A DNA stretch of 63,518 bases, counting the filler, from Neoconidiobolus thromboides FSU 785 (taxonomy: Eukaryota; Fungi; Entomophthoromycota): NCBI GenBank assembly GCA_025603075.1. It is 7 parts of 7 records of this genome, joined end to end, with 100 filler letters (N's around TTAATTAATTAA, not from the genome) between each part and the next. Parts side by side here need not be neighbours in the genome. Positions count along the whole stretch, not along the records: positions 22,434 to 46,431 come from MU626522.1; 6 more parts are not named here. The stretch is one strand, 5' to 3'. The notes under the pieces are model-generated. The model ran no database searches, was not told where the DNA came from, and saw nothing but the letters and a program-made list of their open reading frames with translations. The position numbers and the translations under genes were made by a program. This document shows, one piece after another, positions 22,434-44,507 of the stretch. Position 1 is the stretch's first letter. Each line of letters opens with the position of its first letter.

Positions 22434-22436
22434 AAA

Positions 22437-22536
22437 TGGGGATGTATTTTTGTGTTTAAGAATTTTACTAACAAATTTTCCGCTTAAATAGCGCTTAAAA
22501 AATGGAAAAAATAATGAAGTTAAAAAAACACTCCCA
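22437..22536 (+). mobile_element. MITE family A copy at contig start (closest to consensus)
   Basis: TGGGGATGTATTTTTGTGTTTAAGAATTTTACTAACAAATTTTCCGCTTAAATAGCGCTTAAAAAATGG...CACTCCCA. Confidence 0.93.
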
Positions 22537-22545
22537 AATGTTATA

Positions 22546-22611
22546 TAGAGATGTGTTTTTGTGTTCAAGAATGTTAGTAATGATCTTTCCACTCATAGCG
22601 CTTAAAAAATG
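22546..22611 (+). mobile_element. Truncated MITE family A copy
   Basis: TAGAGATGTGTTTTTGTGTTCAAGAATGTTAGTAATGATCTTTCCACTCATAGCGCTTAAAAAATG; right end missing. Confidence 0.75.
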
Positions 22612-23200
22612 TTTAAATAATTAGAATGTAAACTATGAAATTAGCTTTGTAGTTTTTATTACTTTGCTAAATTATTTGAAATTGTCAAAAGTTTAAGTTA
22701 ATTTCAAAACTTTTGTATTTAAATTAATTTATATAAGTAGCATTGTTTTATTCAATATGTATTTGATCAAAATATAATAAATTTTATACTTAAAATAAGT
22801 TTGTATTGTAATGCTATAATAATTACATTCATTCAAGTAAACTGATATAGATAACTTAATTTAAAAATGAATATAAAAATTTCAAATTAAAAAATACCAG
22901 TTATTTTACATTTTATACTGTCTAAATATCTATATCTATATTTATGATATATTTTATTAAACTAATTAATATTCAAAATTATACTAAATAACATATTCTA
23001 TATTCATTACTGATAAATAAAAATCTATACTTTTTATTATATAAGAAAATGAATTATTAAAATTAGTTGAAATTAAAAGAGTGCTTAGCTAATTAAACTG
23101 ATTTAGCTTTCTGGCAAAAATTAAAAAAAACTCATAAATTGAATAAACTCAGTTTATCGTCATTAAAAATTTAAAACTGAATTAAATTGAATCAACTAAT

Positions 23201-23304
23201 ATATGGGAGTGTTTTTTTTGACATCATTATTTTTTCCATTTTTAAGCGCTATTTAAGCGGAAAAATTATTAATAAAATTCTTAAACACAAAAATACATCC
23301 CCAT
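23201..23304 (-). mobile_element. MITE family A copy
   Basis: ATATGGGAGTGTTTTTTTTGACATC...AATACATCCCCAT. Confidence 0.92.
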
Positions 23305-23701: not shown

Positions 23702-24431
23702 ATGAATAGCAGTAAAAGTAATAAGTACCACCCGATTCTTGTTTGAATCAAGAAACACTAATTGAGCTATGTAATAAATATAAAATATATAGATCATTGC
23801 TTCAGTATGGAATAATGATGAACTTTTCAAAAGTTAGATTTTATTATAATAAACCCAGTATAAGGATTAAAATAGAAAATTTCCATGAATGTACCAAACA
23901 TGTAATTGGAAAACTTATATATTCCACAATAGGAAAAGCCAAAGGTAATAAATTGGAAATTAGATTTTAAAAAAAAAAGGTCAAGAAGCAGTGTTAAACC
24001 AAAAATGGATTATTGATGAGTATGAAGTTAGAGTTTATAGGTCGTGGTGTTATTTAGAGATTATTATCCGTTTAATAATATTAAGCTTTGGGCAGGGATT
24101 TGTTGGCAAAGCATTCGAAGAAAAGCAAAAAACTAGCTTCAGTATTTATGGCAAAGTTGTTTATTGTACTCCTCTATTAGTTGATAAATATCCTTTTTAT
24201 TTCAATCTTGCGATGTTATTTCTTATGCCAAACGATGAAGTGTATTATAATAAAGTAATCATCACAAGCAAGTTTTTAATCAGCACAAATCTTCTATCAG
24301 CCATTTATGTATATGAACCACCTGAAATCAAATGTATTTATTGTAGAAATACCACTCATATGAACAATCAATGCGTAACAATTGGTGTTTTAAGGAATTT
24401 ATTTGATATTGCAAAGAGAGATTCGTCATGA
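23702..24431 (+). pseudogene. RRM-like + CCHC zinc-knuckle gene (LINE ORF1/gag-like), copy 1, frameshifted
   Basis: MNSSKSNKYHPIL-(fs)-LNQETLIELCNKYKIYRSLLQYGIMMNFSKVRF...KLEIRF-(fs at the A10 run, 23969-23978)-KKKGQEAVLNQKW...SIYGKVVYCT...LFLMPND...EIKCIYCRNTTHMNNQC (CX2CX4HX4C). Colinear with the 38302 ORF. Confidence 0.8.
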
Positions 24432-24664
24432 CAATCAAGGACTCAGAAATAAAATAAAATTCAATCATACTGCTATTCTACTTGCTTTGAGTTTACACGA
24501 AAATTGCTAATATGATTTTTAATTCTTGTTTTAATCTTAAATATACTTTGTTTAATATATTAATCTAAATCAATAAGTAAATTGTATCTTGTTTTTACTA
24601 TAATATATATCTTATTAGAGTTTTGTTTAATAAAACTATTCAAAGATTTTGTAAAAGGATCAAT

Positions 24665-24769
24665 ATATGGGGATATATTTTTGTATTTAAGAGTTTTACT
24701 AACAGTTTTTCCACTCAAATAGCGCTAAAAGATGGAAAATTAATGAAGCCAAAAAAAACACCCCCATAT
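24665..24769 (+). mobile_element. MITE family A copy
   Basis: ATATGGGGATATATTTTTGTATTTAAGAG...AAACACCCCCATAT. Confidence 0.92.
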
Positions 24770-25567
24770 ATAAGATAGTAATGTAATAAAAAGGATTGTG
24801 AATTTTATAAAATGGGTTTAAAATAAATCGTATTCTAAGCATAGCGGATAAAGTAATAATTTTTTATAAAATTTGTATTTAATTTTGTTATTAGCTAAAC
24901 ATAATTACATTTCTATTCTATCCCGTAGATTCAAAAAGAAATATTCATTATATACGTATATAAACATTTATTTTATAAAGTCATTATTTATTAAACCTGG
25001 AGAGTTAATTATATTATCATAAAGCTATATTTTATAGCATTAATGTAGATAAACTGGCTAAAAACGTTTTATATTTATTGTAACAAATTTTACGATCCTT
25101 TCGATCCTTTATGTTAAACTAATACTTGATTTTAAACTTCTCTATATCAAGGTATTCATCGTTGTTTTTACATGCTTTGGGGATTTTAAAATATAGCACT
25201 GATTTCTTTGACTATGTAGCTTAATATAAATACAAAGCTACTATGTTCTAGACACTGTTGTTATGACATTGAGTTTACTATGTTATTTTGTCAAGCCTAT
25301 CAAATTATTTTAAGTTTCATTATTTTATCAAGTTTCTTGTATTTGTGCTCTCGTTTTTATTATGAAAGTCCTTGATTCTTATATAAATGGCTTTCAAATA
25401 TTAAATTCTTATATTTATATATTATATCTTGAAGAAGCCTTATTTATAACTGTTATAATATTTAATAACAACCTTTTTATAAATAAGTGACGATTGATTT
25501 ATGATAATCGTATTTTAGTATAAAATATCAAAAGTTTTGTTGTGACACTTATCAAATCAAAACCAAA

Positions 25568-26261
25568 ATGTATATTGATAACGTTGATAAGCGTATTGTG
25601 TAGATTTTTTTAATCAAATTCTTAAAAATTGAATATTTTAGATACAAGTATAAGATCAATAAATCATTTCTTTGATATGGGATAATGATTAACTTGTCCG
25701 AAGTTAACTTCCGACAACATAAAGTAAAGAGTCAAAAGCTTACTTTTATAAATATTAAGGATTGTGTATCAACTATATATTTACCACACTTTATTTTTAT
25801 CCAATGATTGAATTTAAAGAATCTAGTAAAGTTGGAATTGGGTTTAAAAAGGAATTGGAAAGAGAATTCATGTTAAACAAAAATGGGATATAGATGGACA
25901 TGTAGTTATATGATGTCGATTATGGGATTATTCAGAAAACGTTATGGGTATAATGTTATCAAACTTTGGAACTAAAATTGCTTTTGGAAAATTTGAAGAG
26001 AGAATAAAATCCTAACTTAGTATCTATAGAAAAGTTATTTCATGTACTTGATTGTTTGAACCTAGTAAAATATTCCGAATTGATATTGTAATAATCTTTC
26101 TAATATCAAATGATGGGACAGGGAATAGACCAGTGTTATCACATGAATTTCTAACTAGTAATAACCTTCCGCCAGCTATTTGTATCTATGATATTTCTAA
26201 AGCTAAATGTATTCATTGTGGAAGTATTAATCATAAGAGTAAGAAATGTGCAGATATTTGA
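25568..26261 (+). pseudogene. RRM-like + CCHC zinc-knuckle gene, copy 2, multiple stops/frameshifts
   Basis: KYKINKSFL*YGIMINLSEVNFRQHK...KVGIGFKKE...RLWDYSENVMGIMLSNFG...SIYRKVISCT*LFEP...IFLISND...KAKCIHCGSINHKSKKC aligns with copies 1 and 3. Confidence 0.8.
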
Positions 26262-26726
26262 GGCTATAAAAAATTATTTATTTAGCCTGAAAAAGATTAA
26301 CGTAACAACTTATTTGTTTTTTTGTATGCTAATTATTATAAAAATTAGAATAAACTTATCCGTCTTAAACCTTTAATATGACTATTTTTGATTTATATTG
26401 TATATGCTTCTTCCATTAAAAAATTGATCTTGTTTAGGTTGACAAATGTTTAAAGACTAATTTAATTATTAGAAAAGTTAAAATCGTAAAACAAACTATT
26501 ATTCATAGTATAACAATTTGATCAAAATTATGTTTATTTTATGAAAGCATAAAAATTAAAAAATTGTTTTAAAAGAAATAAAACTTTAGTTAATCATTTT
26601 AAAAAAAAATGAAAACTGAATTAATTTCAATTTAAATAATAATTATGCATAACTTCAAGAATCCCCCAAAAAACCGAAATTTCTCATTTTAAAAGCTTGA
26701 CTTTTTTATATATAAAATAATCAAAA

Positions 26727-29700
26727 ATGCCCAGAGATAAAAATAGAAGACCCAGACGTAGACCAAAGACTCAAGAGGAAGAAGAGAATAACCAAATCAA
26801 TGAAATCAAACCGGAAGAAATTGAGCAAACAATTGATAATCAAGACAACCAAATAGGAGACGATAATTATGAAGCAGAAGAACGATTTAATGGCGGTAGA
26901 CCATCTTATATTGATCCAGCATCATTCGGTCAAGTAGAACCTGAAGTTCAACATTATTTTAAAAACTTAGAAAAAGTTATTGATGATAAAGATAATGTAC
27001 CAGAAGGTAAGTGAGTAGGCTATTTTTTTATAAGAATAATATTAAAATTTATTCTAGATTTGGATCTTATGATTGAAAGTGCTTTTAGTGAAATTAAAGA
27101 TAAAGAATATCAGTTGTTTGTTGATCATGAATGTTCAAGAGTTTTAGAAAAAATTGTTTGTTTAGCTCCAACTTATAGAATTGTTCAATTATTGAACGTT
27201 TTAAATCAGAAGTAAAAAGATTTGTTTACCAATAATTTATATATTAATATAGTTTAGACTTCTTACTTGTTTAACTCATCGATTTGCCTCCCATGTATGC
27301 CAGACATTAATTATTTTATCTTCAGAAATCTTAGATAGAGAAGTAAGCTTTTTTATTTACTTTTGAGTAAAAATAAGTATTAATAAAAAAAAATAGTGTA
27401 AAGGACAACCAGTAAAAATACCTGAAGATTTAAAAGAGGAGATAGGTGAATTACCAACTATGGAAGAATTATTTATTTCAATATCCAATGTAAGTTTTGT
27501 GTGTAAAGGAATTTTTTATTTATATTTAATCTAAATAGAACCTTTCCGGTCGTTGGTCCGATCTAATTTTTGATACTTTTGCTTCCCATGTGCTTCGAGT
27601 AGTACTTCAAGTATTTCATGGCTCACCAATTGAGGATGCCAACTCCCATAAATCCGTAGTTAAAAGTAAAAGTTCCAAAAAATACATGGAAGCTAAAAGT
27701 GGCGGGAATTTTATAGTAAATTTATATCATTACTCTAACCTATTTATTTTGTATTAATATGTTTATAGGCACCAAAATTAGAAGGAAATAGACAAGTACC
27801 AGATTCTTTTAAAGATTTATTGAAAAATGTAACTACTGAGTTAATTGTTGATGTATCAGAAACTGTATTGAGAACCACTGTTTTTCATACAACGGCTAGT
27901 CCAGTTATTCAATTATTATTACAAATTCAATCTAAAAAAGATGGACCTGAAAGTGTGGATGCCTATGTTAATACTTTATTACATGATATTCCTACTGAAG
28001 AAGGTAAGCTGTTTTAATTATTATTTTGTTATAGAATATATATTAATTTTTTTTAGCTATCATAAATCAAGGAGATAAATTAAAAAATCCATATGTACTT
28101 GCTATTATTAAAGATAATGTAGGATCTCATTTATTTGAAAAAATAGTACAAGTAAGCATTATTTATATAAATTATTATTCAATATTAGATGCTAAATCAA
28201 TTAACAATTAGGTCGTTTCAAATTCAATGTATAATCGAATTTATCAGTTATATTTCCGTAATAAAATGATAGATTTAAGTTTACATGGTACGGGAAATTT
28301 TGTTATTCAAAGTTTGATTTCAAATGCTAGAAGTGAAGCTCAATTACAATCTATGATTGATGAAGTTGTTCCTTCTTTTGAAAGGCTTTTGAGTAAGTTT
28401 GGATTTTTTATTGGTAGGTATATGTTTTTTATAAAGTTTTTAAATAGAGGTTGGTCGTCCAGGTGTCGTTAGAAGTGTTGTCGATGCTTGTCTTAATTTA
28501 AATGCTTGTTATAAGGAAGCTGTTAAGGTAGTTATTCGATTTAATATATAAAGAGTTTAAATTCCAAGTTATAACAATATGTTTAGTTGACTTCAACATA
28601 CACTAAATGATTAAACCTTATATTAATTTTTATTTTGCTTTAGGGACTTACATCAGCATTCCATATCAATACGCCAACTGAACAAAAAGATTTAATTCAT
28701 GTTGTATTAAGAATGGAAAGTTATCCAGTAATTTTATTTATTAAGATTAATACTTAATTATTAAATGATATATTATAGACATATAAACAATATGAGCATG
28801 AAAAAGTTAAATATCATCTTCAAGGATCAACACTATTACAATCTTTAATAAAATATCCAGAACCACATAATGGATTAGTTATTAATAGGTAACATAATAA
28901 CTAACAGTATAAAAATGTGAAATACTAATATTATTTAATAGTATATTAAGTCAATCTAGTGAAACATTATTAAGTTTATCAAAAGATCAAACAGCTTCAT
29001 TTATTATTGAAAAGATATTAAAATCGGACAATATCAATCTTAAAGTTAAACGTAGAATATTAAATGCATTTGATGGCTCATTTCATTTGCTTGCTATTGA
29101 CAAATTTGCTGGTCGTATTTTAGATGCTTGCTGGGCTATTGCTGATATTAAAGACAAAGTAAGTTTATAATAATGTTAATATTAATATAAACTAATTACT
29201 AATAAATATTTAATTTTAATAGGAAAAAATAGCTAGTGAATTAGTACAACATGAAAGTTTACTAGCAACAAATTTCTTTGGAAAATTTGCTTTAAGAAAT
29301 TGTAAAATTGAAAGTTTTAAATATAAAAAAGACGATTGGATATTACGTGAAGAAGGATTTGATCGTAAAAAACAAATGTTTAATGAAATATTTGATGAAA
29401 AAGATCAATCTTTATTTACAAAGAAAAAATCGTTATTAGCTAATAGTTTAAAGCCAAGTATAGCATATCAAGGTAATAATGAGAATGAGAAGAATGGGGG
29501 GAAGGTAATTTTGATTGAACTTTTTTTAGTAACAAAAATAATTGATTTTTTATGTTAGAATGTATCAAACAATGATAAGGTTTCAGAAATTGATGAGTTA
29601 TTTTCAAAAGTTAAGAAAGAAAATAAAGAGGATGATATAATAAATAAGAACATAGAAATAGAAAAACCAAAAAAGAGTAAAAAGAATAAAAAGAAAGATA

Positions 29701-29888
29701 AAGATATGGAAGACATATTAGAAGCTATAACATTCTCCTCTGGTAAAAAGAAGCGTAAGAAAGAAGAAAAGAAGGATGAGAAAAAAGAAAAGAAGGAGAA
29801 AAAAGAAAAAAAAGGCGAGGATAGGGTTAAGAAGGAAAAAAGTAACGACGATATCTTTTTAAACGTAAACGGAGATTCAAGAAAATAA
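26727..29888 (+). CDS. NOP9: Nucleolar protein 9 (Pumilio/PUF-repeat 18S rRNA processing factor), multi-exon
   Basis: Spliced fragments FGQVEPEVQHYFK / QLFVDHECSRVLEKIV / LLTHRFASHVCQTLI / FDTFASHVLRVVL / KDNVGSHLFEKIV / LSLHGTGNFVIQSLI / LAIDKFAGRILDACW / NFFGKFALRNC, and a Lys-rich C-terminus. About 10 short GT-AG introns; exon boundaries approximate. Confidence 0.9.
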
Positions 29889-30355
29889 AGGAAGAAAGTA
29901 TCTAAAAAAGTATGAATGATTTTGAGACATAATAAGTATTGTAATAATATATAGAGTTTTATCGTATAATATAGGTTATACTTTTATAGAGAGTTAGGTT
30001 ATGAAATAAATATAAATTAACTATTTAGTGTTTTTGTTTTATTGTTTTGATTTATTTATGCTTTGTTTAAACTTTCTATAACTTAGACCATCAAAATGGT
30101 CAATTAGGATAGTATTTATGTTGAATTCAACTTCATGATTAATTTATTTGATAAATTGGTATTCTGATTATTACTATAACTTCAATGAACTATTGTTTAA
30201 TTATTACAATATTTTTTAGAAATCCCAATTTCAAATTAAACGCTTACTAAAAAAGACTCAAAAAAAACAAGCTTCAATTTAATTGGTAAAAATTTCGAGC
30301 TAATTCAGTTTCACTTGTGATAAGCTAATTTTTAACTTTTTTATAATTAACTACA

Positions 30356-31352
30356 ATGGCCAGCAAATTGATTAGAGTAAATAAACAACTCATAGTATAA
30401 TACTACATTATGTTAATAGCAATGAACTATTTAGAAAGCCTTTATTGGAACCTCATTACTTGGGGTAGGAAGTTTAATTAATAAACAAGCTATTTTAAAT
30501 CAAGGAGAGAAAACTAAAGTAAATAAGATTAAAATGAACAAAACATAAGAAGAATACTAATATAATAATTTAGCCAAGTATTTATGATGATAGTGTCATT
30601 GAGTTGGTTTATCTTGAAGATAAAACTTCAAGACTTGAGCATAAAATTAAAGAAATTCGTTTAGAAACTAATGAACAAATTGTAGGCTATAAAGTAAGTC
30701 TTATTATTGCTATCTTAATCTGTTAATTAACTAATTGTTTCTATCAAAAAATGTAGAGTTTTATTCAAAGTTATATTGATAAAATTGTTCATTTTGAACA
30801 AAAAACTGAAAGTGAGCGGTTTATATTTGATTAAAATGAATGATTTTATATTAATTTTAATAGAATTTGTCCACTCTTTAGTACCAAAAAATGAGACTTT
30901 ATTACCCAATTCTTTATATGTCGGTATTGCTACTTTATATGGTAGTATTTTAGCTAGAAACAGTAATCACTTTAATTGATTTTTTATTATCTTAGTTAAC
31001 TAACCGACAATTTTACCATATAGGATTCTTCCTCCTTCGTTTAGCTTCCCCCCTAGCTTTTGGTATTTCCTTTTCTTATTTCTTACTGCCAGGTACCACT
31101 CAAAATATAGCAGATCGATTAGTTGATTTTTATAAAAATAATTCAACCAATTTGAACTTCAATGAAATCAGTTCTGCTTCAAGTACTACTACTGAACATT
31201 CTAAAAGTTATACATCTCCAGAGTTAGATATCAATAATAAAAATCAAAATGCTCCACTTGAACAAACAATTCAAGAAGTTGAGGCTATGTATACTACTCG
31301 TGGTGATCCAGGCGTCCGTCCTGTTTTGGAGCGTAAAGAAACTTCAGAATAA
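30356..31352 (+). CDS. MIC26: MICOS subunit Mic26/27 (apolipoprotein O family), multi-exon
   Basis: Spliced pieces PSIYDDSVIELVYLEDKTSRLEHKIKEIRL / FVHSLVPKNETLLPNSLYVGIATLYGSILARN / FFLLRLASPLAFGISFSYFLLPGTTQNIADRL match the ApoO/Mic26 pattern. N-terminal exons are uncertain. Confidence 0.75.
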
Positions 31353-31547
31353 ATATAAAAGTTTAATTAATATGTTTTGTTATTGAAAGGTAGCTGTAAT
31401 TTTTTGTGCTTTAGTTTTTTATTAGGATTTTTTAAACAAATTTATAAAGAAACAATTAAATAGAGTGGAAAAAAGATTAAGATTTTAATATTTTATTTAA
31501 TGGAACAATTAAGCCAGTTTAATAAACTAGTATATCGTTCAATGGAT

Positions 31548-32653
31548 TTATGCTTTGGCAATAAGTTCTAAAGAAAGAAGTAATAAATATATAATCAAAG
31601 ATAAAACAACAAAAAAAATTACTTTGGGCATCAGCAATAGCTTCTTTAAGGAGTTGAGCTTGCTATTAAAATATTAATACCAAAATAACAATACATATAA
31701 AATCACTTACAATTTTTGGATCCTTAATAGATTTTTGAACATTTTCTAAAACTTGAGCAGCAACAGCTTTTTGTTCTTGTTCACGTACAGCGTTTTCATA
31801 ACGTACCCAAGAATCAAGAGTAGATTTAATTTCACTGTTGACTTGAACTTGTTGCTTAAGTTCAAAAATTTTACTTTGCATAGAAGCTAATTCCTATTAA
31901 TTGAAAATGAAATTATTGATATCGTAATAAAATATAATTCAAGTATTAAGGACTACCTTTGACATAGTAAATAAATCTTTGGTAACTGGTACAATATCAG
32001 ATAATTGAGTAGCAGATTCAATACGTTCTTTGACTTGTTCTTTATGATTTTGACGAGCTTCAACTAAAAGGTTTTTAATGAACTAAATAAAAAAAATCAG
32101 TTATTCTCAAACTCATAATTTCAGCTCAAATAAACTTACATTTAATCGATTTTCAGCCCATTCATTATAGGGAGCTTTAGCATTTTTTAAAATTAAAGCA
32201 ACAATAGCTAAGAAAGAAGCAGCAACAACAGTTTCTTCATTAACTACATAAATTTCTTTAGAAATTAACCAAGTAGATAAAGTAGCTCCGATGGTAACAA
32301 ATCCAGCTTTTGATACAATATTGTTTCCTGGAAGGGAATCAATCAAACTAGTAGCTTTGGTTTTTGGATCAACTTGTTTAACTAAAACAACAAAGGTTAA
32401 TAAAAAAGGTACAAATAAGATGATGAAAATTACCTTCTGGGGTGCTGGAAGAGTTACGAACACTGAAATATTTTTAATATTTTTTTAGTTTAAAATGTAT
32501 AAATAAAATTACATTTGGTTACAAACTGAAGTACGTAAACTTTTAGCAGCTACAGTACGGGATACAGCTATTTAAAAAAATTAACCTTTAAAATCTTCAA
32601 CTATGTAATAATATTTTACTTGATAATGAAGAAATCGCAAATTTGGAAGCCAT
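31548..32653 (-). CDS. ATP4: Mitochondrial ATP synthase subunit b (subunit 4), multi-exon
   Basis: Presequence MASKFAISSLS..., then DPKTKATSLIDSLPGNNIVSKAGFVTIG...SKEIYVVNEETVV and KSTLDSWVRYENAVREQEQK. Introns have GT-AG ends; stop TAA at 31548-31550. Confidence 0.95.
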
Positions 32654-33068
32654 TTTTAAATCTAAAATTTAATCTTAATTAATAAACAACGTAATTTCTG
32701 AAGTATCTTGTATTGTCTTACTAACTATTGTTTTAAGATAGAGTTTTTTTAACCTTAAAATTAAAACGTTGTTTACTCGCAACTATCAGATTCGAAATTG
32801 ATAAAATAAACCAATCAGATATTGATAAGTTAGGGTTATTTAATTTTACCCTAATTTTAAAAAAAATTACTGGCTGAAATACTAAGTTTAGGTTTGGGGT
32901 ACAGGGCATTATACTTTTGGGGTACTTAATTTTAGTGTAAAAATTGTAGTGATGCAAAATTAAATGATTGGATTTATCCCAAAATTAAATCCCATCGCAT
33001 TTTATTTAGGATAAACTTTATTTTAATTTTAGTTACAATTTTATCAAAAAAATCAAAATCAAAATCAA

Positions 33069-33522
33069 ATGTCCATTACGCCTAGAAGTCGAGTATTAAA
33101 AGTATATAGAGAATTATTGAGCTTAACCCAAGAGATACCAAAAGATCATTTAAGACCAAAAAGACAATTTCGAGATGAACTTAAAGAGCATATTGTTAGT
33201 AAGTTTAAATTAAATAAAGAAGTACCCGTTGGGAGTGAAGAATGGAATATTTTAATAAAAGATGCGGAAGAACAATTAACAGCTTTTGAAAATTTAGCGG
33301 ATAATAAATATCATGATGAGGTAACTTAATAATATTTGTACTGCTAAATAATTAAGGATATAAATTAAACGAATAATATTTTAGTTTCCATTATCTAATA
33401 AGATGTTAAATCCAGCTAGTAATCCAAAATATTATGAAAATTTAGTTTTGGATTTAGCTAAAACGGATCCAAATAAAAAACCAACGGTTAAAGATTATTT
33501 AAAAGGATTCTTTCGTAGATAA
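33069..33522 (+). CDS. CBP6: Cbp6/UQCC2-like cytochrome b translation and complex III assembly factor (2 exons)
   Basis: MSITPRSRVLKVYRELL...IPKDHLRP...LADNKYHDE / intron / FPLSNKMLNPASNPKYYENLV...KGFFRR*. Confidence 0.75.
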
Positions 33523-34907
33523 GGAAGATATAAGAGGAGTAAAAGGAAGTTGAGCTTAAAATAAATTATTCAATAGCTTATTAACAGATGAGGCGTGATT
33601 GAAGTTATTAAGTGGTGAATTTCAAAATAAAATATAATAAAATAGTATTATTTATAAAATTTTAATTATGTTTAAAGTTGTGATATGTTAAATAAGAGGC
33701 TTATGTCTATTATTGTAGGGTTTTTATTAATAAAGTTTAATAAAACATCAAAATAGATTTAATAAAGTATATACAAACGAAGGTGAAGGTCTTTTTTATG
33801 TAAGTTATAAATATAAGATTCTTTTTGTGGTATAAAATTGTGATTAAAACTGTATAAAAATTCCAAAACCTAACTTAAAGTTGTCTAGACTATGCGCAAT
33901 TAATATTTTATAAAAATCGAACAATAGTTTACTTGAATAAATTTAGTCCAGTATTCTAATCTGAAGGCCAATCATATTTATTTTTAATTTATTTTAAAAA
34001 TTAAAACATACAATAACGATATTAATAAAAAGGATATTATTTTATAGAGATTTTGATTATTTATTATTTATTATTGCTATAATACTCTACTAAACTTAGG
34101 GATAGATTTTGCAAAAACAAAATTTGGCTTTGAAAACTCTTTCCTGCAAAGTAAATTCCCAGTCAAAGCTATTTTTGCAATAATAATGATAATTTTTGAA
34201 AAGAGCTTATGATTTTAAACTTTAAATTTAAACTGAATAAACAGTTGATTTTTAAGCTTAAATTTAAAAGTTAACTCAAAAATTTGATTCTGAGATAAAA
34301 ATAAAATATCGAAAATAATATTATTTATAAAAATAAAAAAATCCATAAAAAACAATTTTTGAATTAAAATGCTTAATCCTATAAATAAATGAAGTTAAAT
34401 TTTTAAAGACAATCATTTTTTATTGTAAATTTTTAAAAATGAAAGAAAACAATTTCTATTTAAATTTTAAAACAATAACTCTCTTTAAAAATAGTATGAT
34501 TGTTTTTGATAATTATTGCTAAAAGTAGTTTGCAAAAAATAAAGTTAGTCCAAAAGCCGACTTTATTTTTGCAGAAATCCATCCTTAATTTTGAAGAGTA
34601 TTATACTAAACTCTACTTATGATAATGAAAATTAATTATAATAATATATTGATTTGAATTTAGTATAATTAATATCATAGTTTTTAATTCCAACTTATTA
34701 AATATTGAATAATAATATTTATTTTAAATATTAATATTAAAACTTTTTTTAAATTTTTAAATTTTTAAAATAATCAAAAATTTATTACGTTTAATAGTTG
34801 TGTAATCAATTTCTCTTTATTGTTTATTGGTTGAACTATAACTAAATTATAATTTATAAAACATAAATTACTTTCAATTTAATAAACAAAACACAAGGTA
34901 AAAAACA

Positions 34908-37165
34908 ATGGATGAAGATGATATTTTATTATATGGGGAAGCGGCATATGAGATGAATGATAGTGCGAAAGAGGATGAAAAGACACCATCTGAATTACAA
35001 AAAAAAGAAGAAAAAGAAGAAGAAAAAGAAGAGTTTAATGATTTTGATTTATATGGAAATAGTAATATAACTGAAAGCAATGATGTTCAAAGTTCCACTC
35101 AAGCAGACAGTACAACAAAAAAAGAAGTTGCAATCAATCAATTAAATCAAGATGAACAAGATTTAGTATTAACGGGTGGATTTATGAATGAACAAACAGA
35201 AGGGTTAACATTGAAAGAAGGTCAACAAGATAGTAATTTAAAGACATTAAATCAAGATTTATTACAAAAACAACAAGACGCATTAAAATCATTAGCTAAA
35301 GAAGAAGAACATAATGAACAATTACCTTCTTTAGATAATTTAGATAGTGATAGCGAAGAATCTATTGATATTATCTTAGATTGCCCAGAAGATAATGAAG
35401 ATGAAGAAAATAATAATAATAATAATAATCAACAATTAGTGAATGTTAAAGTAGTAGTGGACAATAAAATGAAACAAAACGAAAAGGGAGGAGGTATTGA
35501 TTTAAATCCAGAACCTATTTACGATGGGGATAATTTATTTGATTTAAATTTGGATCATTTTGAAGATAAACCTTGGAAGAAACCGGGTAAATTTAATTTA
35601 TCAAATTTAAAATTCAGCTGCAGCTTCATTAAATCAATATTATTTTAGGTGCTGATATTACTGATTATTTTAATTATGGATTTAATGATAGAACATGGGC
35701 TTTGTATACTCAACGTCAACAAGCTATGAGATTAGGTGGTAGTAAAATTTTAGTAGATGTCTTAGCTAATCAAGTGAAATCAATTTACCATAGTAAATTT
35801 ATCATCTATTATTTACTTTTAATTAAATGTATCAATTTATTTAGATTCTAATCCAGGCTTTAATCAAAATATGAATAATAATGATAGAGATGATCCTGAT
35901 AACGTGTAAGTTAAATAAGAATAAAATAATTTATTAATATCAGTATTAATGTTAATATTAAGGAATCGACAAAGACCAATAATAAATTACAATACAGGTA
36001 ATGATTAAAAAGAAAGATAAAATAAAATAATATTAATATTAATATTAACATATTAAATTTAGATCCTAATACAATGTTTCATGGAAATAATTTTAATGTA
36101 ATTTACATTATATAACTATAAACATTGAAAAACAAACCAATGAGCTAATAATATTTATTTTATAGCTATCAAACCAAAATCAATTAAATTCAAATCAAAA
36201 TAATATGAATCAAAACTTAAACAGTAGAGATGAGCGAAATAATAATAATTTATCTCCAATTAAAAATCGAGGAAAATACAGTGATGATGACAATTATAAT
36301 AGTAATAGATAATATAATATAATAAATTAATTTAATATAATTCACAGATAAAAATAAAGATACTCGTCGTAGAAGAAGTCCTAGCCCTAATTATAAATAT
36401 TCACCAAATCATCGACGCTCTCGTTCACCTAACTATAAAACGAATATTAATTCACCAGGAAGACATTCAAGATCACCAAGTTATCGACGATCTTTATCTA
36501 AAAGAAGATCACGTAGTCCGAAGAGAAGATCACGTACACCATCACGTAGAAGATCTAGGTCTAGATCAAAATCAAAAACTAGAAATCGATCTAACTCTAA
36601 AGTTATTAAAGATAGAAGATATGATAAAGTTAAAGATACTAGTAAATCTAGAGATTTAAGCATAGACTCTAAAAGAGTAGAAGGTAAATTATTTATATTT
36701 ATATTTAATACTAATATAAAATAATAATAATAATATTTATTAAATTAGATAAAAATAAAAAAGATAATGGAATGAATAATAATGAAAGAAATCGAAAAGA
36801 GATTAAAAATTATAGGGAAAATATTGATTTGAATTATAACAACGATAATAGGGATAGATTATCTTTTACTAAATCAAGTGAAAACAAAGTAAGCTAATCG
36901 TAAATTATTGTTACTATTATTAATTATTAACTATTAATTATATATTATTGATATAATTTTATTAATTTTTTCTTTTTAGAATTTTGATAAAGAAAGAGAT
37001 AACAAAAGATCTACACAAGGAGATAGATCAGGTAGAAAATCTCCTGAATATTCTAATATTAGGTAATAACGATTATTATAAATAATGTTTTATAATTTAC
37101 TTATGTTATTATTTAGTGAAAAAAGAAGCAATAGAAATGATTATGATAGTAAACGACGTCGATAA
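34908..37165 (+). CDS. FIP1: Pre-mRNA 3'-end processing factor Fip1, multi-exon, Arg/Ser-rich C-terminus
   Basis: Fip1 motif DLNLDHFEDKPWKKPG / intron 35587-35648 / ADITDYFNYGFNDRTWALY. Acidic N-terminus; RS/RD-rich 3' exons. Confidence 0.93.
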
Positions 37166-37508
37166 ATCACAATTTATTATATTTTTTTAATTTAAAAGTT
37201 ATATTAAAAAAATCATTTTATTTTTGCTACTTTTTTAAATTTAATAAAAATTCAATATTATTATTTAATATAAAAGTAATATTTTATTTTGATTTATCAA
37301 TTTAGATAAATTTTTTGTTCTTAATTCATTTTCTAAAAATCCTACAAAATTTTAAAAACTATCAAAAGCTTATCGTATTTCAATTATACCCCAAAGTTGC
37401 TCAACAACCAATTTTTCTTTCTCTCCTCCTATCTTTTCCTCCTCTTCTATTGATATAAAATACTCACCAAATTGTTTTGATATATTAATTATATATTCAT
37501 CATCTACT

Positions 37509-37611
37509 ATTTGGGTGTATTTTTTAGCTTCATTACTTTTTCCATTTTTAAGCACTATTCGAGCGGAAAAATTGTTAGTAAAATTATTAAGTAAAAAATA
37601 CATCCCCATAT
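37509..37611 (-). mobile_element. MITE family A copy
   Basis: TTTGGGTGTATTTTTTAGCTTCATT...AATACATCCCCATAT. Confidence 0.88.
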
Positions 37612-38301
37612 AAAATTCTTAAAAGTACAATTGGAATTTGGAACCAGATTAATAAAAGAGCATGAACAGTTCTATTATGTAAATCCTTATATAATCAGAG
37701 TATAAGTGCATTTATTTAGAGAATATATACTCAAACATTTGCTTTTTAATCCAAGATTAAGCAATCAATATAAAATTTTGAATTTCTTAAGGGATAAAGA
37801 TTGACGCAATATAGCTTTACTCAATAATTCTATTTATTGGTCAAAGCGGGTATAATCGCTTGTAAATTGAAATACAGTTATATAATTGTACATGTTTATA
37901 ATATTGAATAGTAATAACATCAATTAATAGAAATAGCAATAACTCCCTTTTTGAATTTTTGAGAGTCAGGCCCCAAGTGCTTTACTCAATGAGAAATAAC
38001 AAAATTATGAGAATCGGAGAAATTGTTAGGAAATTAAGAGAATGTGGGGATTTTTGTTAAAACTGCTTTAAGAATTCTAGCTTTTAAGCCTCTGTGATAT
38101 CTGTAAGCATTCTATGGTCCAGGTAGAAATTCATTTGCAAAAAAAATGATGACTCTATTATAAAGGTTTCATAAATGGTTTTGAATATTCAACACAATTT
38201 AATGTATTCATTTTAGTAAAAATAGTCATAAAATAAAATACAAACGAATAAAACTATTTACAACCTTATTTTTTATTTTGAAATTTTGAAGTATTACTAA
38301 A

Positions 38302-39026
38302 TTACTCCGATTGCTCAAATAGCTTTTCAACCCCATAAGCATTAGAACAGTAGCTACTGACATGATCAGTTTTTTCACAATGTACGCATTTGATTTCGGC
38401 TAATTCATATGTACATTCGATTAGTGGGAGGCTTCTACTAATTAAATAATGATCTTGTATCCTTAATCTTTTGTTTAATGTAGCGTCATTTGGCATGAGA
38501 AATATTAAGGCTTTATCAGAATAAAGTATTTCTTTAAAGTGAAACAAATGGGTACAAGAAATGACTTTTCCATAAATATTAAATTTTGCTTTTAACTTTT
38601 CCTCCAATTCTTCTCCAATAAACTCATTTCCCAAATTTGATAACATTATACGCATAACAATATCTGAGTGATGCCACAGTCTATAAGTTTTGATTGTATA
38701 GCCGTTGACCTCCCATTTTTGATTTAATGCTAATACTCTATCTTCTTCATTTTTGAACCCAACTTCAAGCTTATGCTTATCAAGTTTACTTACTGGGCGA
38801 TATCCAATTTTTCCAACTATACATCTAATACAATCAGTCATATCCCTTGCTTTGATCTCTTTACATGGCATTTTGTGCTTTAAAAAACTAACATTTGATA
38901 AGTCCATCATTATTGCATGTTGAAGCGATGTTCTATTTATTTTATATTTCTCATCTAGTATAATTTTGTCTTAGGGTTTGAGGCAAATGAAGATATAAAA
39001 TATTTACCAGTCAAATATGTATCCAT
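38302..39026 (-). pseudogene. RRM-like + CCHC zinc-knuckle gene, copy 3 (202-aa ORF intact; 5' part broken by a stop and a frameshift)
   Basis: ORF 38302-38910 ends in CVHCEKTDHVSSYC (CX2CX4HX4C). Homology to copy 1 extends upstream of the first Met (*DKIILDEKYKINRTSLQHAIMMDL) to a probable original ATG at 39026 in another frame, preceded by TATAAAA. Confidence 0.78.
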
Positions 39027-39727
39027 ATCAGCTTTTATACTATTTACCATTTAATGTGTTTTAATGAATTTGTTTATAAAAAGAATAAGGAATCAATGAA
39101 CTCATTCCAATATAAATATTCTTCTATTGACTGATCCAATTAAGCGCCTTAGCTTAATATGGGGCGATAAAAATAATTTTTTTGATTAATCAAAATAAAT
39201 ATAAAGTATTTTAAAAAGGATGCATCAAATAGAAATTAAAATACAATAATACAAGCACTTGGTGTAGCAGTATATATTAATTAAATGCTTACACAATTAA
39301 TGAGTAAATGGATTTTTATCAATTTAATGTTAGGAAATGAAAATTAAAAATTAAGGGATAAAAGATAATCACAGATGAAATTTAGCCAATAACAAAACGA
39401 AACTATAGCTTTTCACATGAAACATTTGTATTTCTATTTTTAAATTGGTATAAATTTGAAACAAATTTTATAAAATATAGCAACAGGCAAAAGTAACCAA
39501 CATAGATTCACTTTTATCCTTCATTGTATATAACGGTTCGAATAAGTTGCTATATTATAAACATTCATATAATATTTTTAATATCTATTTTTGATAAACA
39601 AATTAGGTAGGGGGTAATGAGCAGACAGACAGGTGTTTTTTTGGTAGAGTATTAATCTATGTAGAACAATTTGTCAATGATTTTTAATAAAAACTCCAAC
39701 TCTTTAATCTAACTTAATAGAAATCAC

Positions 39728-39832
39728 TTGAGGATGTATTTTTATGTTTAAGAATTTTACTAACAATTTTTCCGCTCAAATAGTGCTTGAAAGATGGAAA
39801 AAGTAATGAGCCCCAAAAAAACACCCCCATAT
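39728..39832 (+). mobile_element. MITE family A copy
   Basis: TTGAGGATGTATTTTTATGTTTAAGAATT...AAACACCCCCATAT. Confidence 0.9.
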
Positions 39833-40106
39833 AATTATTTACTCATTAGAATATAGAGAAAGGTTAAGTAAAATTTGCTTATCATCACTAAAAAACTCAT
39901 ATTGACTCTTCAATGTGCTTTTTATATAATAGCCTTCCAGTTGCTTTGTTATAATCAAAACTATTATCCAAAGATTACTTAGCTTAAATGTTTTATGTTA
40001 GATGATACAATTCGGTGTCTTAACTTAGCATAGGATATTAAAAGTAATCATAGCCTTTTAGTTGTTGGCATAAAATGCCTCAAAAAAAACTGTTGATTAT
40101 AAACTA

Positions 40107-40210
40107 ATGGTGATGTTTTTTTTGATTTCATTACTTTTCCATTTTTTTAAGCGCTATTTGAGTGGAAAAATTACTAGTAAAACTCTTAAACATAAAAATA
40201 CATCCTCAAT
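40107..40210 (-). mobile_element. MITE family A copy
   Basis: ATGGTGATGTTTTTTTTGATTTCATT...AATACATCCTCAAT. Confidence 0.88.
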
Positions 40211-40549
40211 GTTTAATAACAAAAGGTCATACATAATGTCATACTTTAATTAATATATTATATAATTATCAAGCAGATGTATTTTTTATGAAGTGCGCAC
40301 TTATTGCAACTTTTATCAACTCAATGATAAGAAGTGAATCGAAGGTATAGAAAATTTAAGGCCAAAAGATCATTCCAATTTTTGATATCAGTAATTCTGT
40401 TTTGTAGTTAAAGAGGTTATAGCCAGCTAAAAATAACAATAAAGCCCAGTACTTTTGTAGAATTATAACCTCTAATGTTAAAAACATCATATTAAGAGGA
40501 ATAATAGTAGTTTTATTAAATACAAGTTGCAGTATATTGAACAATTTAT

Positions 40550-40655
40550 ATACGAGAGCGTATTTTCTTGTTTGACAATTTTACTAACAGCCCTTCTAAT
40601 CAAAAAGTGCTTAAAAATTCGAAAAACTAATGAAATAAGAAAAACATCTCTATAT
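40550..40655 (+). mobile_element. Highly degenerate MITE family A copy
   Basis: TACGAGAGCGTATTTTCTTGTTTGACAATTTTACTAACAG...AAGTGCTTAAAAATTCGAAAAACTAATGAAATAAGAAAAACATCTCTATAT. Confidence 0.7.
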
Positions 40656-40799
40656 TTAAAAAAGGACTGCTTGTGATATAAAATCAAAATAATAACTTTT
40701 AGACGTTTAAAATAAGTAAACTTACTATAATTTTTATGATAAAAGTATGCAAACAAAAGTCATAAAAGCTCTCTACTACTTAATTTTATTGAAATATAA

Positions 40800-41220
40800 T
40801 TTGAGTTGCCTTCTGTAAAATCAAAGAGTTTTTGGTATCCTTAGGTACTTATACAATGTTCAGTTTTATGTTCAGTACCTCCATATCTAAAACATACAGC
40901 TTTAAAGATTTCATAATTTCAAATATCTGGTGGAAAATTGTCACTAATTAAATTTTTATCTATGGGAGCTGCCTTCTCATTTAATACATTGTTATTTAGT
41001 TTGAAAAATACTATTGTAGTATCAATATAAGAACATTTGATTCTGATTAGATAGCTAAAGACTTGTAATAATCTCTCTATAAGTACTAAGTTTAGTTCTT
41101 AATGTCACTTTCAATTTTCTACCAAGGAATTTACCTTTATATTTTGATATCTCTAAACTTATGTATTTCCTGAATGATGAAATATCTATATAGTTTAATT
41201 AAATATCTGTTAATATAGCA
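40800..41220 (-). pseudogene. RRM-like + zinc-knuckle gene, copy 4, heavily decayed and cut by a MITE
   Basis: Reverse frames read YINRYLIKLYR...GKFLGRKLKVTLRTKLSTYREIITS...NLISDNFPPDI*NYEIFKAVCFRYGGTEHKTEHC...GYQKLFD. These match copy 3 (NGYTIKTYR, KLKAKFNIYGKVISCT, YGVEKLFE) and copy 2 (SNNLPPAICIYDISKAKC). Confidence 0.68.
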
Positions 41221-41221
41221 C

Positions 41222-41325
41222 ATGGTGATGTTTTTTTTGGCTTCATTGCTTTTTCCATTTTTTAAGCACTATTTGCGTGGAAAATTTGTTAGTAAAATTC
41301 TTAAACACAAAAATACATCCTTAAA
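41222..41325 (-). mobile_element. MITE family A copy
   Basis: ATGGTGATGTTTTTTTTGGCTTCATT...AATACATCCTTAAAT. Confidence 0.88.
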
Positions 41326-42110
41326 TACTACCTTTACAGCTATTACTAATTTGTACAAAAAAGTAGCTTAATAAATAACAAAGTTAGTTGGTTATGAAAA
41401 TTATATTTACAAAAGCTATTATTACTTAGTATTACAATGTTTATAAATGAACTTCACTAAAATATGATATATAAATCTAAAGATATAAAAGTCAAAGAGT
41501 ATATCCTTAAATATAAGAGTTCTTTTGATTATCTCTAGGTTTTAATTTAATCAATATTAAATTAGGGTTAAGCTTTGCAAAATGTAAGATTGTTTGAAAT
41601 TAGGATTGTTTTGAAAATGCACTGAGTAAATTGTGCATATTATAATAGAAAAATTGTAAACTATAATAAACTAAGAAGATCTAATAGAGAAAGTAGTGTA
41701 ACTTATAGGCTTAGGATAGCGAAAAGAGCTTAAAAGATGCCAAGCTCATACTTTTGATGTACTGCGTAAGTAAACAATACCATAAAAAATATTTATGATT
41801 TTAAAATACAAACCAATATTATAATAAATTGTAAAACACAAAGAAATACAAATAAAGGCATACCGATAAATGTATAAATAGCGATATATATATTATGTCA
41901 AGATATACAAATAATGAATAAGTTTTTTAAGATTTACTAAGGGACAAAATATTGAAGCAATTGAATATAGCTAATAATAAAGCTAAATATCAGCTTTTGC
42001 ATAAGAAATATGTAGTTATATCCCTTAAAATTGACACAAGATTATATAATTAGAAATCAAATTATAAAGAAGCCAAGCTGATGTATTAAGTATACAAAAG
42101 ATCTTTTTAA

Positions 42111-42213
42111 ATATGGGGATGTATTTTTGTGTTTAAGAATTTTATCAACAAATTTTCCACTCAAACAGCGCTTAAAAAGTGGAAAAAATAATGAAGTCAA
42201 AACACTCCCATAT
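42111..42213 (+). mobile_element. MITE family A copy
   Basis: ATATGGGGATGTATTTTTGTGTTTAAGAATT...CAAAACACTCCCATAT. Confidence 0.93.
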
Positions 42214-42345
42214 ACTAAAGTTAAATTTATATATTTTGATTCTTAGCATTAGAGCGTTATTATAAGTTCACTTGGTTTATTTTGTACATAACATATAGTA
42301 AAGATATTACTTCCTTTTGGAATAGCAAAACTAAAAGACCTAAAA

Positions 42346-44402: not shown

Positions 44403-44507
44403 ATATAGAGATATATTTTTGTGCTTAAGAATTTTATTAAGAATTTTCCTGCTCAAATAGGGCTTAAAATGGAAAAAGTAATGAAGCCAAAAAAAGCATC
44501 TCCATAT
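44403..44507 (+). mobile_element. MITE family A copy, ~150 bp downstream of the multicopper oxidase stop
   Basis: ATATAGAGATATATTTTTGTGCTTAAGAATT...AAAGCATCTCCATAT. Confidence 0.85.

What the first reader, a model, noticed from the sequence alone, without database searches (positions are those of the whole stretch)
23702..41220. Family of stand-alone RRM-like + single CCHC-knuckle (LINE-ORF1/gag-like) genes with no ORF2
Seen: four colinear ~230-codon paralogues within 18 kb (23702-24431 +, 25568-26261 +, 38302-39026 -, 40800-41220 -). They share KYKI...IMMxxSxVxF, KLExGFK...LNQKW, IYGKVISCT, FLMPND and a terminal CX2CX4HX4C (decayed in copy 4). Each stops shortly after the knuckle, with no endonuclease/RT frame, poly(A) tail or LTR visible downstream. 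Copies are highly diverged from each other, so the family is old, and copy 3 has a TATA box before its original ATG. Established: tandem RRM plus CCHC knuckle is the ORF1 architecture of L1/Tx1-type retrotransposons. Inference: either an ORF1-only non-autonomous retroelement or a domesticated RNA-binding gene family in birth-and-death turnover, possibly a decoy/restriction factor against LINEs. This is the best candidate for an undescribed system in the window.
Basis: partly seen in the sequence, partly recalled or inferred. Interest (0 to 1): 0.75.

Follow-up and report, generated by a model that had tools for sequence, protein, structure and literature searches.

The report
Orphan tandem-RRM zinc-knuckle gene family
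Four old copies (one intact, one nearly intact, two dead) of a small predicted RNA-binding gene found only in Conidiobolus-type fungi have the domain layout of a LINE retrotransposon's first protein, but they are not part of any LINE here and were probably copied as DNA.

Summary
The piece comes from Neoconidiobolus thromboides FSU 785. It holds four colinear paralogues with 25-40% amino-acid identity to each other.

- **Copy 3** (38302-39026, minus strand) is intact.
- **Copy 1** has a single frameshift in an A10 run.
- **Copy 2** has several stops and a frameshift.
- **Copy 4** is a 3' half cut off by a MITE, with a decayed knuckle.

An AlphaFold model built from 15 family sequences (pLDDT 76) shows two RRM folds followed directly by one CX2CX4HX4C knuckle. 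Foldseek hits tandem-RRM proteins at E about 1e-6, and VIA gives Z 8-9. That layout matches Type-I LINE ORF1p, but also the cellular RBM4/Lark and ZCCHC3 proteins.

No copy has room for an ORF2, or any ORF2 remnant, downstream. No poly(A) tail or shared flank was found. Copies 1-3 share an aligned upstream ATG and a probable short 5' intron, which points to DNA-level duplication.

An exhaustive HMMER search of 1.84 billion proteins found only 10 relatives. Seven are N. thromboides gene models, clustered on three contigs. The others are one of two intact C. coronatus paralogues and two environmental sequences. No Pfam family matched, and no sequence link to any LINE ORF1p was found.

Best reading: an old, lineage-restricted, stand-alone RNA-binding gene family in birth-and-death turnover. 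Descent from a LINE ORF1 is possible but unproven. Interest is moderate to low.

The parts
38302..39026 (-). Copy 3, the intact gene. Proposed structure: exon 1 at 39026-39008 (ATG plus 6 codons), intron at 39007-38955 (53 nt, GTAAAT...TACTAG), exon 2 at 38954-38302. The product would be about 223 aa. The NCBI/JGI model (P0001, 189 aa) starts at a later Met.
   Evidence: ORF list. The reading frame stays open upstream of Met-Met as far as 38970. Intron size fits the 48-63 nt introns of the neighbouring ATP4 gene. Chance of an open frame this long is 8e-10. The intron is inferred, since there are no RNA data.
38677..38946 (-). Copy 3, first RRM-like module (model residues about 4-93). Its first strand spans the Ile-Met-Met-Asp stretch, so translation starting at Met-Met would truncate this strand.
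   Evidence: AlphaFold model mcae21968ba41. Tandem-RRM alignments covering residues 10-190 to UP1, NONO and PSF.
38398..38658 (-). Copy 3, second RRM-like module (model residues 100-186). RNP2-like I-M-L-S-N-L and RNP1-like K-A-L-I-F-L-M-P stretches carry few aromatic residues.
   Evidence: VIA Z 8-9, rmsd 2.2-3.2 over 75-82 residues to many RRM domains. pLDDT 84-92. RRM_1 at E 0.087 in relative P0010.
38347..38388 (-). Copy 3, single CX2CX4HX4C zinc knuckle, directly after the last strand of RRM2. A short conserved tail ending in K-L-F-E follows.
   Evidence: Read directly from the translation. The knuckle is conserved in copies 1 and 2 and in P0003, P0004, P0009 and P0011.
23702..24431 (+). 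Copy 1, nearly intact. ATG at 23702, possible 35-41 nt intron ending at 23752, and one frameshift in the A10 run at 23969-23978. There are no in-frame stops. It is annotated as KAI9291619 (P0002), with a model intron that skips the frameshift and removes a conserved strand.
25568..26279 (+). Copy 2, a pseudogene. It has at least 4 premature stops (25673, 25911, 26013, 26049) and at least one frameshift between 25804 and 25872. The knuckle is still intact. The stop at 26259 is followed by the conserved G-Y-K-K-L-F tail.
40811..41180 (-). Copy 4, a 3' half only. It has a frameshift and two stops, and the second Cys of the knuckle is Tyr. The 5' part is cut off by the MITE at 41222-41324.

Best explanation
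These are members of an old multigene family restricted to Conidiobolus-type fungi. It encodes small (about 220 aa), mildly basic proteins built from two non-canonical RRM folds followed directly by one CCHC zinc knuckle.

**What is shown:**
- The four copies, their state of decay and the predicted fold.
- The absence of any ORF2.
- The rarity of relatives and their taxonomic restriction.

**What is inferred:**
- Copy 3 is a working two-exon gene whose product binds and chaperones single-stranded RNA. The two RRM sheets would hold the RNA and the knuckle would add a contact to unpaired bases, as in other RRM + knuckle proteins.
- The copies arose by DNA-level duplication. They share an aligned start codon and a 5' intron, and they sit in local clusters on three contigs.
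- They diverged for a long time under coding constraint and are now being lost one by one (birth-and-death). In this window one copy is intact, one is one frameshift away from intact, and two are dead.
- They lie in two MITE-rich islands either side of a housekeeping block (NOP9, ATP4, CBP6, FIP1).

The layout equals that of Type-I LINE ORF1p, so descent from a captured ORF1 is possible. I put that at about 40%. In this window the genes are not parts of retroelements.
For: - **Copies and decay:**
- **Coding constraint:** chance of copy 3's open frame is 8e-10. NG86 dN/dS is about 0.35-0.38 between copies, with dS saturated.
- **Fold:** AlphaFold pLDDT 76. Foldseek finds NONO/SFPQ, IMP3 RRM12, HuR, HuD and UP1 at E 1e-6 to 1e-5 with probability 1.00. 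VIA hits RRM domains at Z 8-9. The family profile against PDB sequences gives only tandem-RRM proteins and retroviral knuckles at the top, at E 0.07-0.1.
- **No ORF2:** the gaps downstream of the four stops are 1.1 kb, 0.47 kb, 0.7-1.6 kb and 1.8 kb, and they end in other genes. None of the ten longest same-strand open stretches in those gaps hits Pfam.
- **No retroelement ends:** homology stops just after the coding sequence, with no poly(A).
- **Shared 5' structure:** the ATG-xAT-A start aligns in copies 1-3, the TAG|AT acceptor aligns in copies 2 and 3, and the sequence between is poorly conserved. The strand upstream of Met-Met is conserved in distant relatives and is structured in the model.
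- **Rarity:** 10 hits in 1.84 billion representatives, and word searches add only P0011.
- **Sources:** N. thromboides contigs of 23998, 37142 and 77841 bp, C. coronatus, one ENA contig and one IMG contig.
- **No recent copies:** no pair exceeds 53% identity, and each window copy's nearest relative lies on another contig.
Against: - The intron and start codon are inferred from sequence only. In AT-rich DNA an in-phase GT..AG pair is easy to find by chance. Copy 1's candidate intron (35-41 nt) is shorter than the 48-63 nt seen nearby.
- Most known members are fragments or pseudogenes lying in repeat-rich islands, which also fits transposable-element relics.
- Window copies are not each other's closest relatives, so simple local tandem duplication does not explain the clusters.
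- Codon-position GC is less gene-like than in neighbouring housekeeping genes. GC1 is 0.39 and GC3 0.26 in copy 3, against 0.44-0.56 and 0.12-0.19 in most of the neighbours.
- I believe JGI annotation masks repeats before gene calling. If so, LINE-borne relatives could exist in these genomes without being in the protein databases. The genomes themselves could not be searched here.
- No expression or binding data exist.
Confidence: 0.55

Rival explanations
1. The copies are relics of the ORF1 of an extinct LINE (Tad1-like or other), or of an ORF1-only non-autonomous retroelement. In that case the divergence between copies reflects old element lineages, and copy 3 merely has not been hit yet.
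For: - The Type-I ORF1p layout, an RRM directly upstream of a CCHC knuckle, is met (definition in PMC4120745, which lists the Tad1 clade, a fungal LINE clade to my knowledge).
- The copies are multi-copy, mostly decayed and sit in MITE-rich islands.
- Nearest relatives lie on other contigs.
- Two members with about 23% identity to each other both land next to the same multi-member CCHC and ZCCHC3-like clusters in the ESM Atlas, at 0.93 and 0.90.
- Codon-position signal is weak.
Against: - None of the four copies has an ORF2 or room for one.
- Dead LINE copies are normally 5'-truncated and keep ORF2, not ORF1. This is established knowledge.
- No poly(A) tail and no shared ends.
- An aligned start codon plus a probable intron would not survive retrotransposition.
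- No near-identical copies among known proteins.
- Only two complete predicted paralogues, and nothing else, in C. coronatus.
- Copy 3's 217 open codons are very unlikely without selection unless it is young.
Confidence: 0.2
2. This is an ordinary cellular RNA-binding protein family with no transposon ancestry, for example a fast-evolving offshoot of RRM + knuckle proteins such as RBM4/Lark, ZCRB1 or SRSF7. The resemblance to ORF1p would then be convergence of a common domain combination.
For: - The best fold and profile matches are all cellular RRM proteins. ZCRB1 (RRM + CCHC) is among the profile hits.
- The Atlas structure neighbours include Lark and RBM4.
- A probable intron is present.
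- Copy number is low and both predicted proteins are complete in C. coronatus.
Against: - No Pfam RRM_1 or zf-CCHC match reaches threshold in any member.
- RNP aromatic residues are largely missing.
- The family is absent outside one fungal lineage.
- There is a high proportion of pseudogenes. This is unusual for a core RNA-binding protein.
Confidence: 0.2
3. The gene is cargo of a larger DNA transposon whose ends are the roughly 107-bp repeats that flank copies 1 and 3 in inverted orientation.
For: Copy 1 lies between repeats at 23202-23304 (minus) and 24663-24769 (plus). Copy 3 lies between repeats at 37508-37598 (minus) and 39724-39830 (plus). Relative to the gene, the arrangement is the same in both cases.
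Against: - Each repeat is a complete small element with its own terminal inverted repeats.
- Spacing to the gene differs widely: 398 and 232 nt for copy 1 against 698 and 704 nt for copy 3.
- Copies 2 and 4 do not follow the pattern, and one repeat interrupts copy 4.
- The sequence between repeat and gene shows no homology.
- Matching orientation in two cases has a chance of about 1 in 4.
Confidence: 0.04

Closest known systems
Type-I ORF1p of non-LTR retrotransposons (classification of Khazina and Weichenrieder 2009, as summarised in PMC4120745 and PMC5203782; found in the I, Jockey, R1, Tad1, plant L1 and L2 clades)
   Same: One or two non-canonical RRMs directly upstream of a gag-like CCHC knuckle. 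The proteins are small and basic, and sequence evolves fast while the fold is kept. Copies are multiple and many are decayed.
   Different: There is no APE/RT ORF2 downstream of any copy, no poly(A) tail and no shared element ends. A probable 5' intron is present. No detectable sequence similarity to any ORF1p family was found, and there are no near-identical copies.
ZCCHC3 (vertebrate stand-alone zinc-knuckle protein that suppresses LINE-1; PMC10351740; Pfam RBD_ZCCHC3_1st and RBD_ZCCHC3_2nd plus zf-CCHC)
   Same: A stand-alone host gene with two RNA-binding domains followed by CCHC knuckle(s). A ZCCHC3-type cluster is among the nearest ESM Atlas neighbours (0.90) for two divergent family members.
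   Different: It has one knuckle rather than three. The ZCCHC3 RBD Pfam models do not match. The family is fungal and lineage-restricted, and no functional data exist.
RBM4/Lark (metazoan RRM-RRM-CCHC splicing and translation regulator)
   Same: The domain order and number are identical: two RRMs and one knuckle. It appears among the Atlas structure neighbours.
   Different: Pfam annotation of the Lark/RBM4 clusters shows RRM_1 in all members. No member of this family reaches the RRM_1 threshold. To my knowledge RBM4 is a conserved single-copy-type gene, whereas this family is multi-copy and decaying.
EKA family (AVRk1/AVRa10) of Blumeria graminis, derived from the ORF1 of a LINE (PMC4641428)
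   Same: It is a precedent for a fungal multi-copy family of stand-alone genes that come from a LINE ORF1.
   Different: In EKA the link to the LINE rests on sequence homology. Here no such link was found. There is also no sign that this family encodes effectors.

Membership tests
LINE Type-I ORF1p | At least one RRM immediately upstream of a CCHC knuckle | tested here: met
   The AlphaFold model has two beta-alpha-beta-beta-alpha-beta modules. The last strand ends 4-5 residues before the first Cys of the knuckle.
LINE Type-I ORF1p | Encoded as the first ORF of an element with an APE/RT ORF2 downstream | tested here: not met
   The downstream gaps of 0.47-1.8 kb end in other genes or copies. 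No open stretch in these downstream gaps exceeds 90 codons, and none matches Pfam. This was tested only for the four copies in this window.
LINE Type-I ORF1p | Sequence homology to the ORF1p of a classified LINE | tested here: inconclusive
   There were no Pfam hits, including to DUF4283, RBD_ZCCHC3 and Transposase_22. HMMER against 1.84 billion proteins finds only the orphan family itself. Type-I ORF1p RRMs are known not to cluster by sequence (PMC4120745). Repbase and HHpred were not available.
LINE Type-I ORF1p | Retroelement hallmarks: intronless copies, a 3' poly(A) or simple-repeat tail, target-site duplications | tested here: not met
   The 3' flanks lose similarity just after the coding sequence and have no A-tail. 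The 5' ends share an aligned ATG and a probable intron.
RRM fold superfamily | Four-stranded sheet packed on two helices (beta1-alpha1-beta2-beta3-alpha2-beta4) | tested here: met
   This rests on a predicted structure only. Foldseek gives probability 1.00 to tandem-RRM chains. VIA gives Z 8-9 and rmsd 2.2-3.2.
RRM fold superfamily | Pfam RRM_1 gathering score and canonical aromatic RNP1/RNP2 residues | tested here: not met
   The best result is E 0.087 (13 bits against a cut-off of 20.7) in P0010 only. The RNP2-like stretch I-M-L-S-N-L lacks the aromatic residue, and the RNP1-like stretch keeps one Phe.
zf-CCHC (PF00098) | CX2CX4HX4C spacing | tested here: met
   Read directly in copies 1, 2 and 3 and in P0003, P0004, P0009 and P0011. 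The Pfam model itself gives no hit at E up to 1, probably because the usual Gly residues are missing.
ZCCHC3 family | Matches to RBD_ZCCHC3_1st and RBD_ZCCHC3_2nd, and three knuckles | tested here: not met
   No Pfam match, and there is a single knuckle.
RBM4/Lark | Two canonical RRM_1 domains plus a knuckle, with orthology across metazoa | tested here: not met
   No RRM_1 match at threshold. Relatives occur only in Conidiobolus-type fungi.

The most novel reading that the evidence does not exclude
An ancestor of Conidiobolus-type fungi captured the ORF1 of a LINE as a host gene, which then acquired an intron. The family has since been kept and turned over as a stand-alone RNA-binding guard that binds or decoys retroelement RNA. 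This would be a fungal counterpart of vertebrate ZCCHC3, with the birth-and-death pattern reflecting an arms race.
Probability: 0.1. Interest if true: 0.6.

Novelty: new member of a known kind. Interest (0 to 1): 0.3.

Why it matters
If the reading holds, this adds an uncharacterised, lineage-restricted family with no Pfam model to the set of RRM + CCHC RNA-binding proteins, in an insect-pathogenic early-diverging fungus.

It is also a small cautionary case. The 'ORF1-like' domain layout alone does not show that a gene is part of a retroelement.

Should a LINE with a homologous ORF1 be found in these fungi, the family would be a second fungal example, after the Blumeria EKA genes, of an ORF1 turned into a host gene family. 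Otherwise it is an ordinary orphan gene family with several pseudogenes.

Tried and rejected
- **Alternative genetic code.** I considered whether the stops might be sense codons (ciliate-type code), because one stop in copy 2 aligns with Gln. Rejected: that stop is TGA, and the neighbouring 572-aa multicopper oxidase is open in the standard code.
- **Composite DNA transposon bounded by the 107-bp repeats.** Rejected; see the rival explanations.
- **Pfam.** Scans of every member and of the downstream open stretches found nothing useful.
- **First AlphaFold run.** With only the window's own six pieces the model was unusable, at pLDDT 32.
- **Sequence search of the PDB.** Only marginal hits.
- **Word-index searches.** Three searches gave only the family itself plus P0011.
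- **Metagenome scans.** One alignment was too variable to search with.
- **Further copies in the piece.** None found, apart from a doubtful knuckle-like relic at about 38200-38270 on the plus strand, E 0.31.
- **tRNA genes.** None.
- **dN/dS.** YN00 failed on saturated data, so only the NG86 and LWL85 values were obtained.
- **Spliced model.** The joined exon 1 + exon 2 protein was not built or searched. Exon 2 was used by reference, and exon 1 (6 codons) is too short to search.


Full report
**Source and setting**

The piece (22434-46431) is about 25% G+C. One copy's gene model is KAI9291619 of Neoconidiobolus thromboides FSU 785, on a contig of 23,998 bp, which is the length of this piece. 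It is fungal, not human.

Neighbouring genes, from Pfam:

| Gene | Coordinates | Strand |
|---|---|---|
| NOP9 | about 26727-29900 | + |
| Mitochondrial ATP synthase B chain (ATP4) | about 31560-32463 | - |
| UQCC2/CBP6 | 33069-33329 | + |
| FIP1 | 34908 onward | + |
| Multicopper oxidase, 572 aa | 44656-46374 | - |

ATP4 shows this genome's introns to be 48-63 nt, starting GTAAGT or GTAxxT and ending YAG.

The four family copies lie in two islands, 22.4-26.5 kb and 37.5-44.5 kb. These islands also hold all 11 or more copies of a roughly 107-bp MITE. The housekeeping block between them has none.

- **Copy 3** has a 202-codon ORF that stays open for 15 more codons upstream. At this composition 217 open codons have chance probability 8e-10.
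- **Copy 1** has no stops and one frameshift inside an A10 run. The deposited model (P0002) skips this with an intron that deletes a conserved strand.
- **Copy 2** has at least four stops and a frameshift.
- **Copy 4** is a 3' half with a frameshift, stops and a Cys-to-Tyr change in the knuckle. A MITE cuts it off.

The copies share 25-40% amino-acid identity and about 66-69% DNA identity. Similarity is confined to the coding region. NG86 dN/dS between copies is about 0.35-0.38, with dS saturated. Most of the divergence therefore happened under coding constraint.

**Gene structure**

- In copies 1-3 an ATG aligns in one column, in the pattern ATG-xAT-A, 50-70 nt upstream of the strongly conserved K-Y-K-I block.
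- In copy 3, removing a 53-nt GTAAAT...TACTAG segment puts that ATG in frame.
- Copy 2 has the acceptor TAG|AT at the aligned position.
- Copy 1 has an in-phase GT..AG of 35-41 nt.
- The stretch just upstream of Met-Met aligns with a hydrophobic strand in the distant relatives and forms the first strand of RRM1 in the model. The protein therefore very likely starts upstream of Met-Met.

I take the two-exon model as probable, about 65%, but it is an inference. Exon 2 was searched by reference, and exon 1 is too short to search.

**What the protein is**

Pfam gives nothing at threshold.

A profile of the window's copies searched against 1.84 billion representative proteins found only ten proteins. 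Their sources are given:

| Source | Proteins |
|---|---|
| This window | P0001 (copy 3) and P0002 (copy 1) gene models |
| N. thromboides, 37,142-bp contig | P0003, P0004, P0007 |
| N. thromboides, 77,841-bp contig | P0005, P0006 |
| C. coronatus | P0009, 423 aa |
| ENA contig | P0008 |
| JGI/IMG contig | P0010 |

Word searches added only a second C. coronatus paralogue of 442 aa, 59% identical to the first.

With these 15 rows AlphaFold gave a usable model. Mean pLDDT is 76, and 85-92 in the cores. The model has two beta-alpha-beta-beta-alpha-beta modules.

- Foldseek against the PDB returns tandem-RRM proteins (NONO/SFPQ, IMP3 RRM12, HuR, HuD, UP1) at E 1e-6 to 1e-5 with probability 1.00.
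- VIA, independently, returns RRM domains at Z 8-9 for residues 100-186, and tandem alignments over residues 10-190.
- The family profile against PDB sequences puts hnRNP A1 and A2/B1 first, at E 0.07-0.1. The alignment runs from the end of one RRM into the start of the next. ZCRB1 and retroviral nucleocapsid knuckles follow lower down.

The knuckle follows the last strand directly.

**Is it a LINE ORF1?**

The layout meets the definition of Type-I ORF1p, an RRM immediately upstream of a CCHC knuckle, which PMC4120745 lists for the Tad1 clade among others (Tad1 is a fungal LINE clade, to my knowledge). The same layout occurs in cellular proteins such as RBM4/Lark, ZCRB1 and ZCCHC3.

Evidence against retroelement copies in this window:

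- There is no room for an ORF2, and no remnant of one, downstream of any copy.
- There is no poly(A) tail and there are no shared ends.
- A probable shared intron is present.
- No two known copies exceed 53% identity.
- C. coronatus has only two complete predicted paralogues.
- Dead LINE copies usually lose their 5' end, where ORF1 sits, and not the 3' end.

Evidence that keeps transposon ancestry open:

- Most members are decayed and sit in repeat islands.
- Each window copy's nearest relative is on another contig.
- Codon-position G+C is less gene-like than in the neighbours.
- Two members with about 23% identity to each other both land beside the same multi-member arthropod CCHC clusters (0.93) and a ZCCHC3-type cluster (0.90) in the ESM Atlas. 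By structure, one also lands beside a 79-member Mucoromycota CCHC cluster, at TM 0.64. These are leads, not tests.
- I believe repeat masking in genome annotation may hide LINE-borne relatives from the protein databases.

**Verdict**

The retroelement reading is not supported for these copies, and the ORF1 ancestry and any anti-LINE role remain open.

Most likely this is an old orphan family of RNA-binding genes, restricted to Conidiobolus-type fungi and evolving by birth and death. Copy 3 is the one working gene here. The decisive test is a genome-wide search for linked APE/RT.

Noticed in passing
window 22436-22545, 22545-22634, 23202-23304, 24663-24769, 37508-37598, 39724-39830, 40107-40209, 40552-40641, 41222-41324, 42109-42215, 44401-44507: A MITE-like repeat of about 104-108 bp with terminal inverted repeats of about 17 nt (TATGGGGRTGTWTTTTT). 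There are at least 11 copies in 24 kb at 66-92% identity, all in the two intergenic islands and none in the housekeeping block. One copy truncates copy 4. The target-site duplication was not resolved. Its short ORFs (F-K-R-Y-L-S-G-K...) are artefacts of the repeat.
   Followed up: partly
window 38200-38270 (+): A possible fifth relic lies tail-to-tail with copy 3. It has a knuckle-like K-C-I-H-F-S-K-N-S-H-K stretch followed by K-L-F. tblastn gives E 0.31 to P0003, and a 31-nt DNA repeat matches the knuckle of copy 2. It may be chance.
   Followed up: partly
window 23893-23966 (copy 1 gene model KAI9291619 / P0002): The deposited gene model bridges the A10 frameshift with a predicted intron. 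That intron removes the conserved V-I-G-K-L...K-L-E-I-R-F strand, so it is probably an annotation artefact over a pseudogene or a homopolymer sequencing error.
   Followed up: partly
window 42346-42774 (-): A 142-aa Ser-rich ORF with no Pfam match sits between two MITEs. It is the only long open frame in the right-hand island besides the family copies.
   Followed up: no
P0009 (C. coronatus KXN70332): UniRef names this relative a '4Fe-4S ferredoxin-type domain-containing protein'. The only Cys cluster is the CCHC knuckle region, so the name is probably an automatic false positive. Both C. coronatus paralogues carry an extra Pro-rich tail of about 160 aa that the N. thromboides copies lack.
   Followed up: no
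window 26317-26398 and 40676-40757: Copies 2 and 4 share about 71% identity over 83 nt of 3' flank beyond the coding region, and both have a stop at the same position before the conserved G-Y-x-K-L-F tail. They may form a sub-lineage of the family.
   Followed up: no
window 22434-46431, coding regions: Housekeeping genes here mostly have GC3 of 0.12-0.19 (one NOP9 exon 0.22) against about 0.25 overall G+C. Third codon positions are therefore more AT-rich than non-coding DNA. The family copies have GC3 of 0.15-0.26 and lower GC1.
   Followed up: partly
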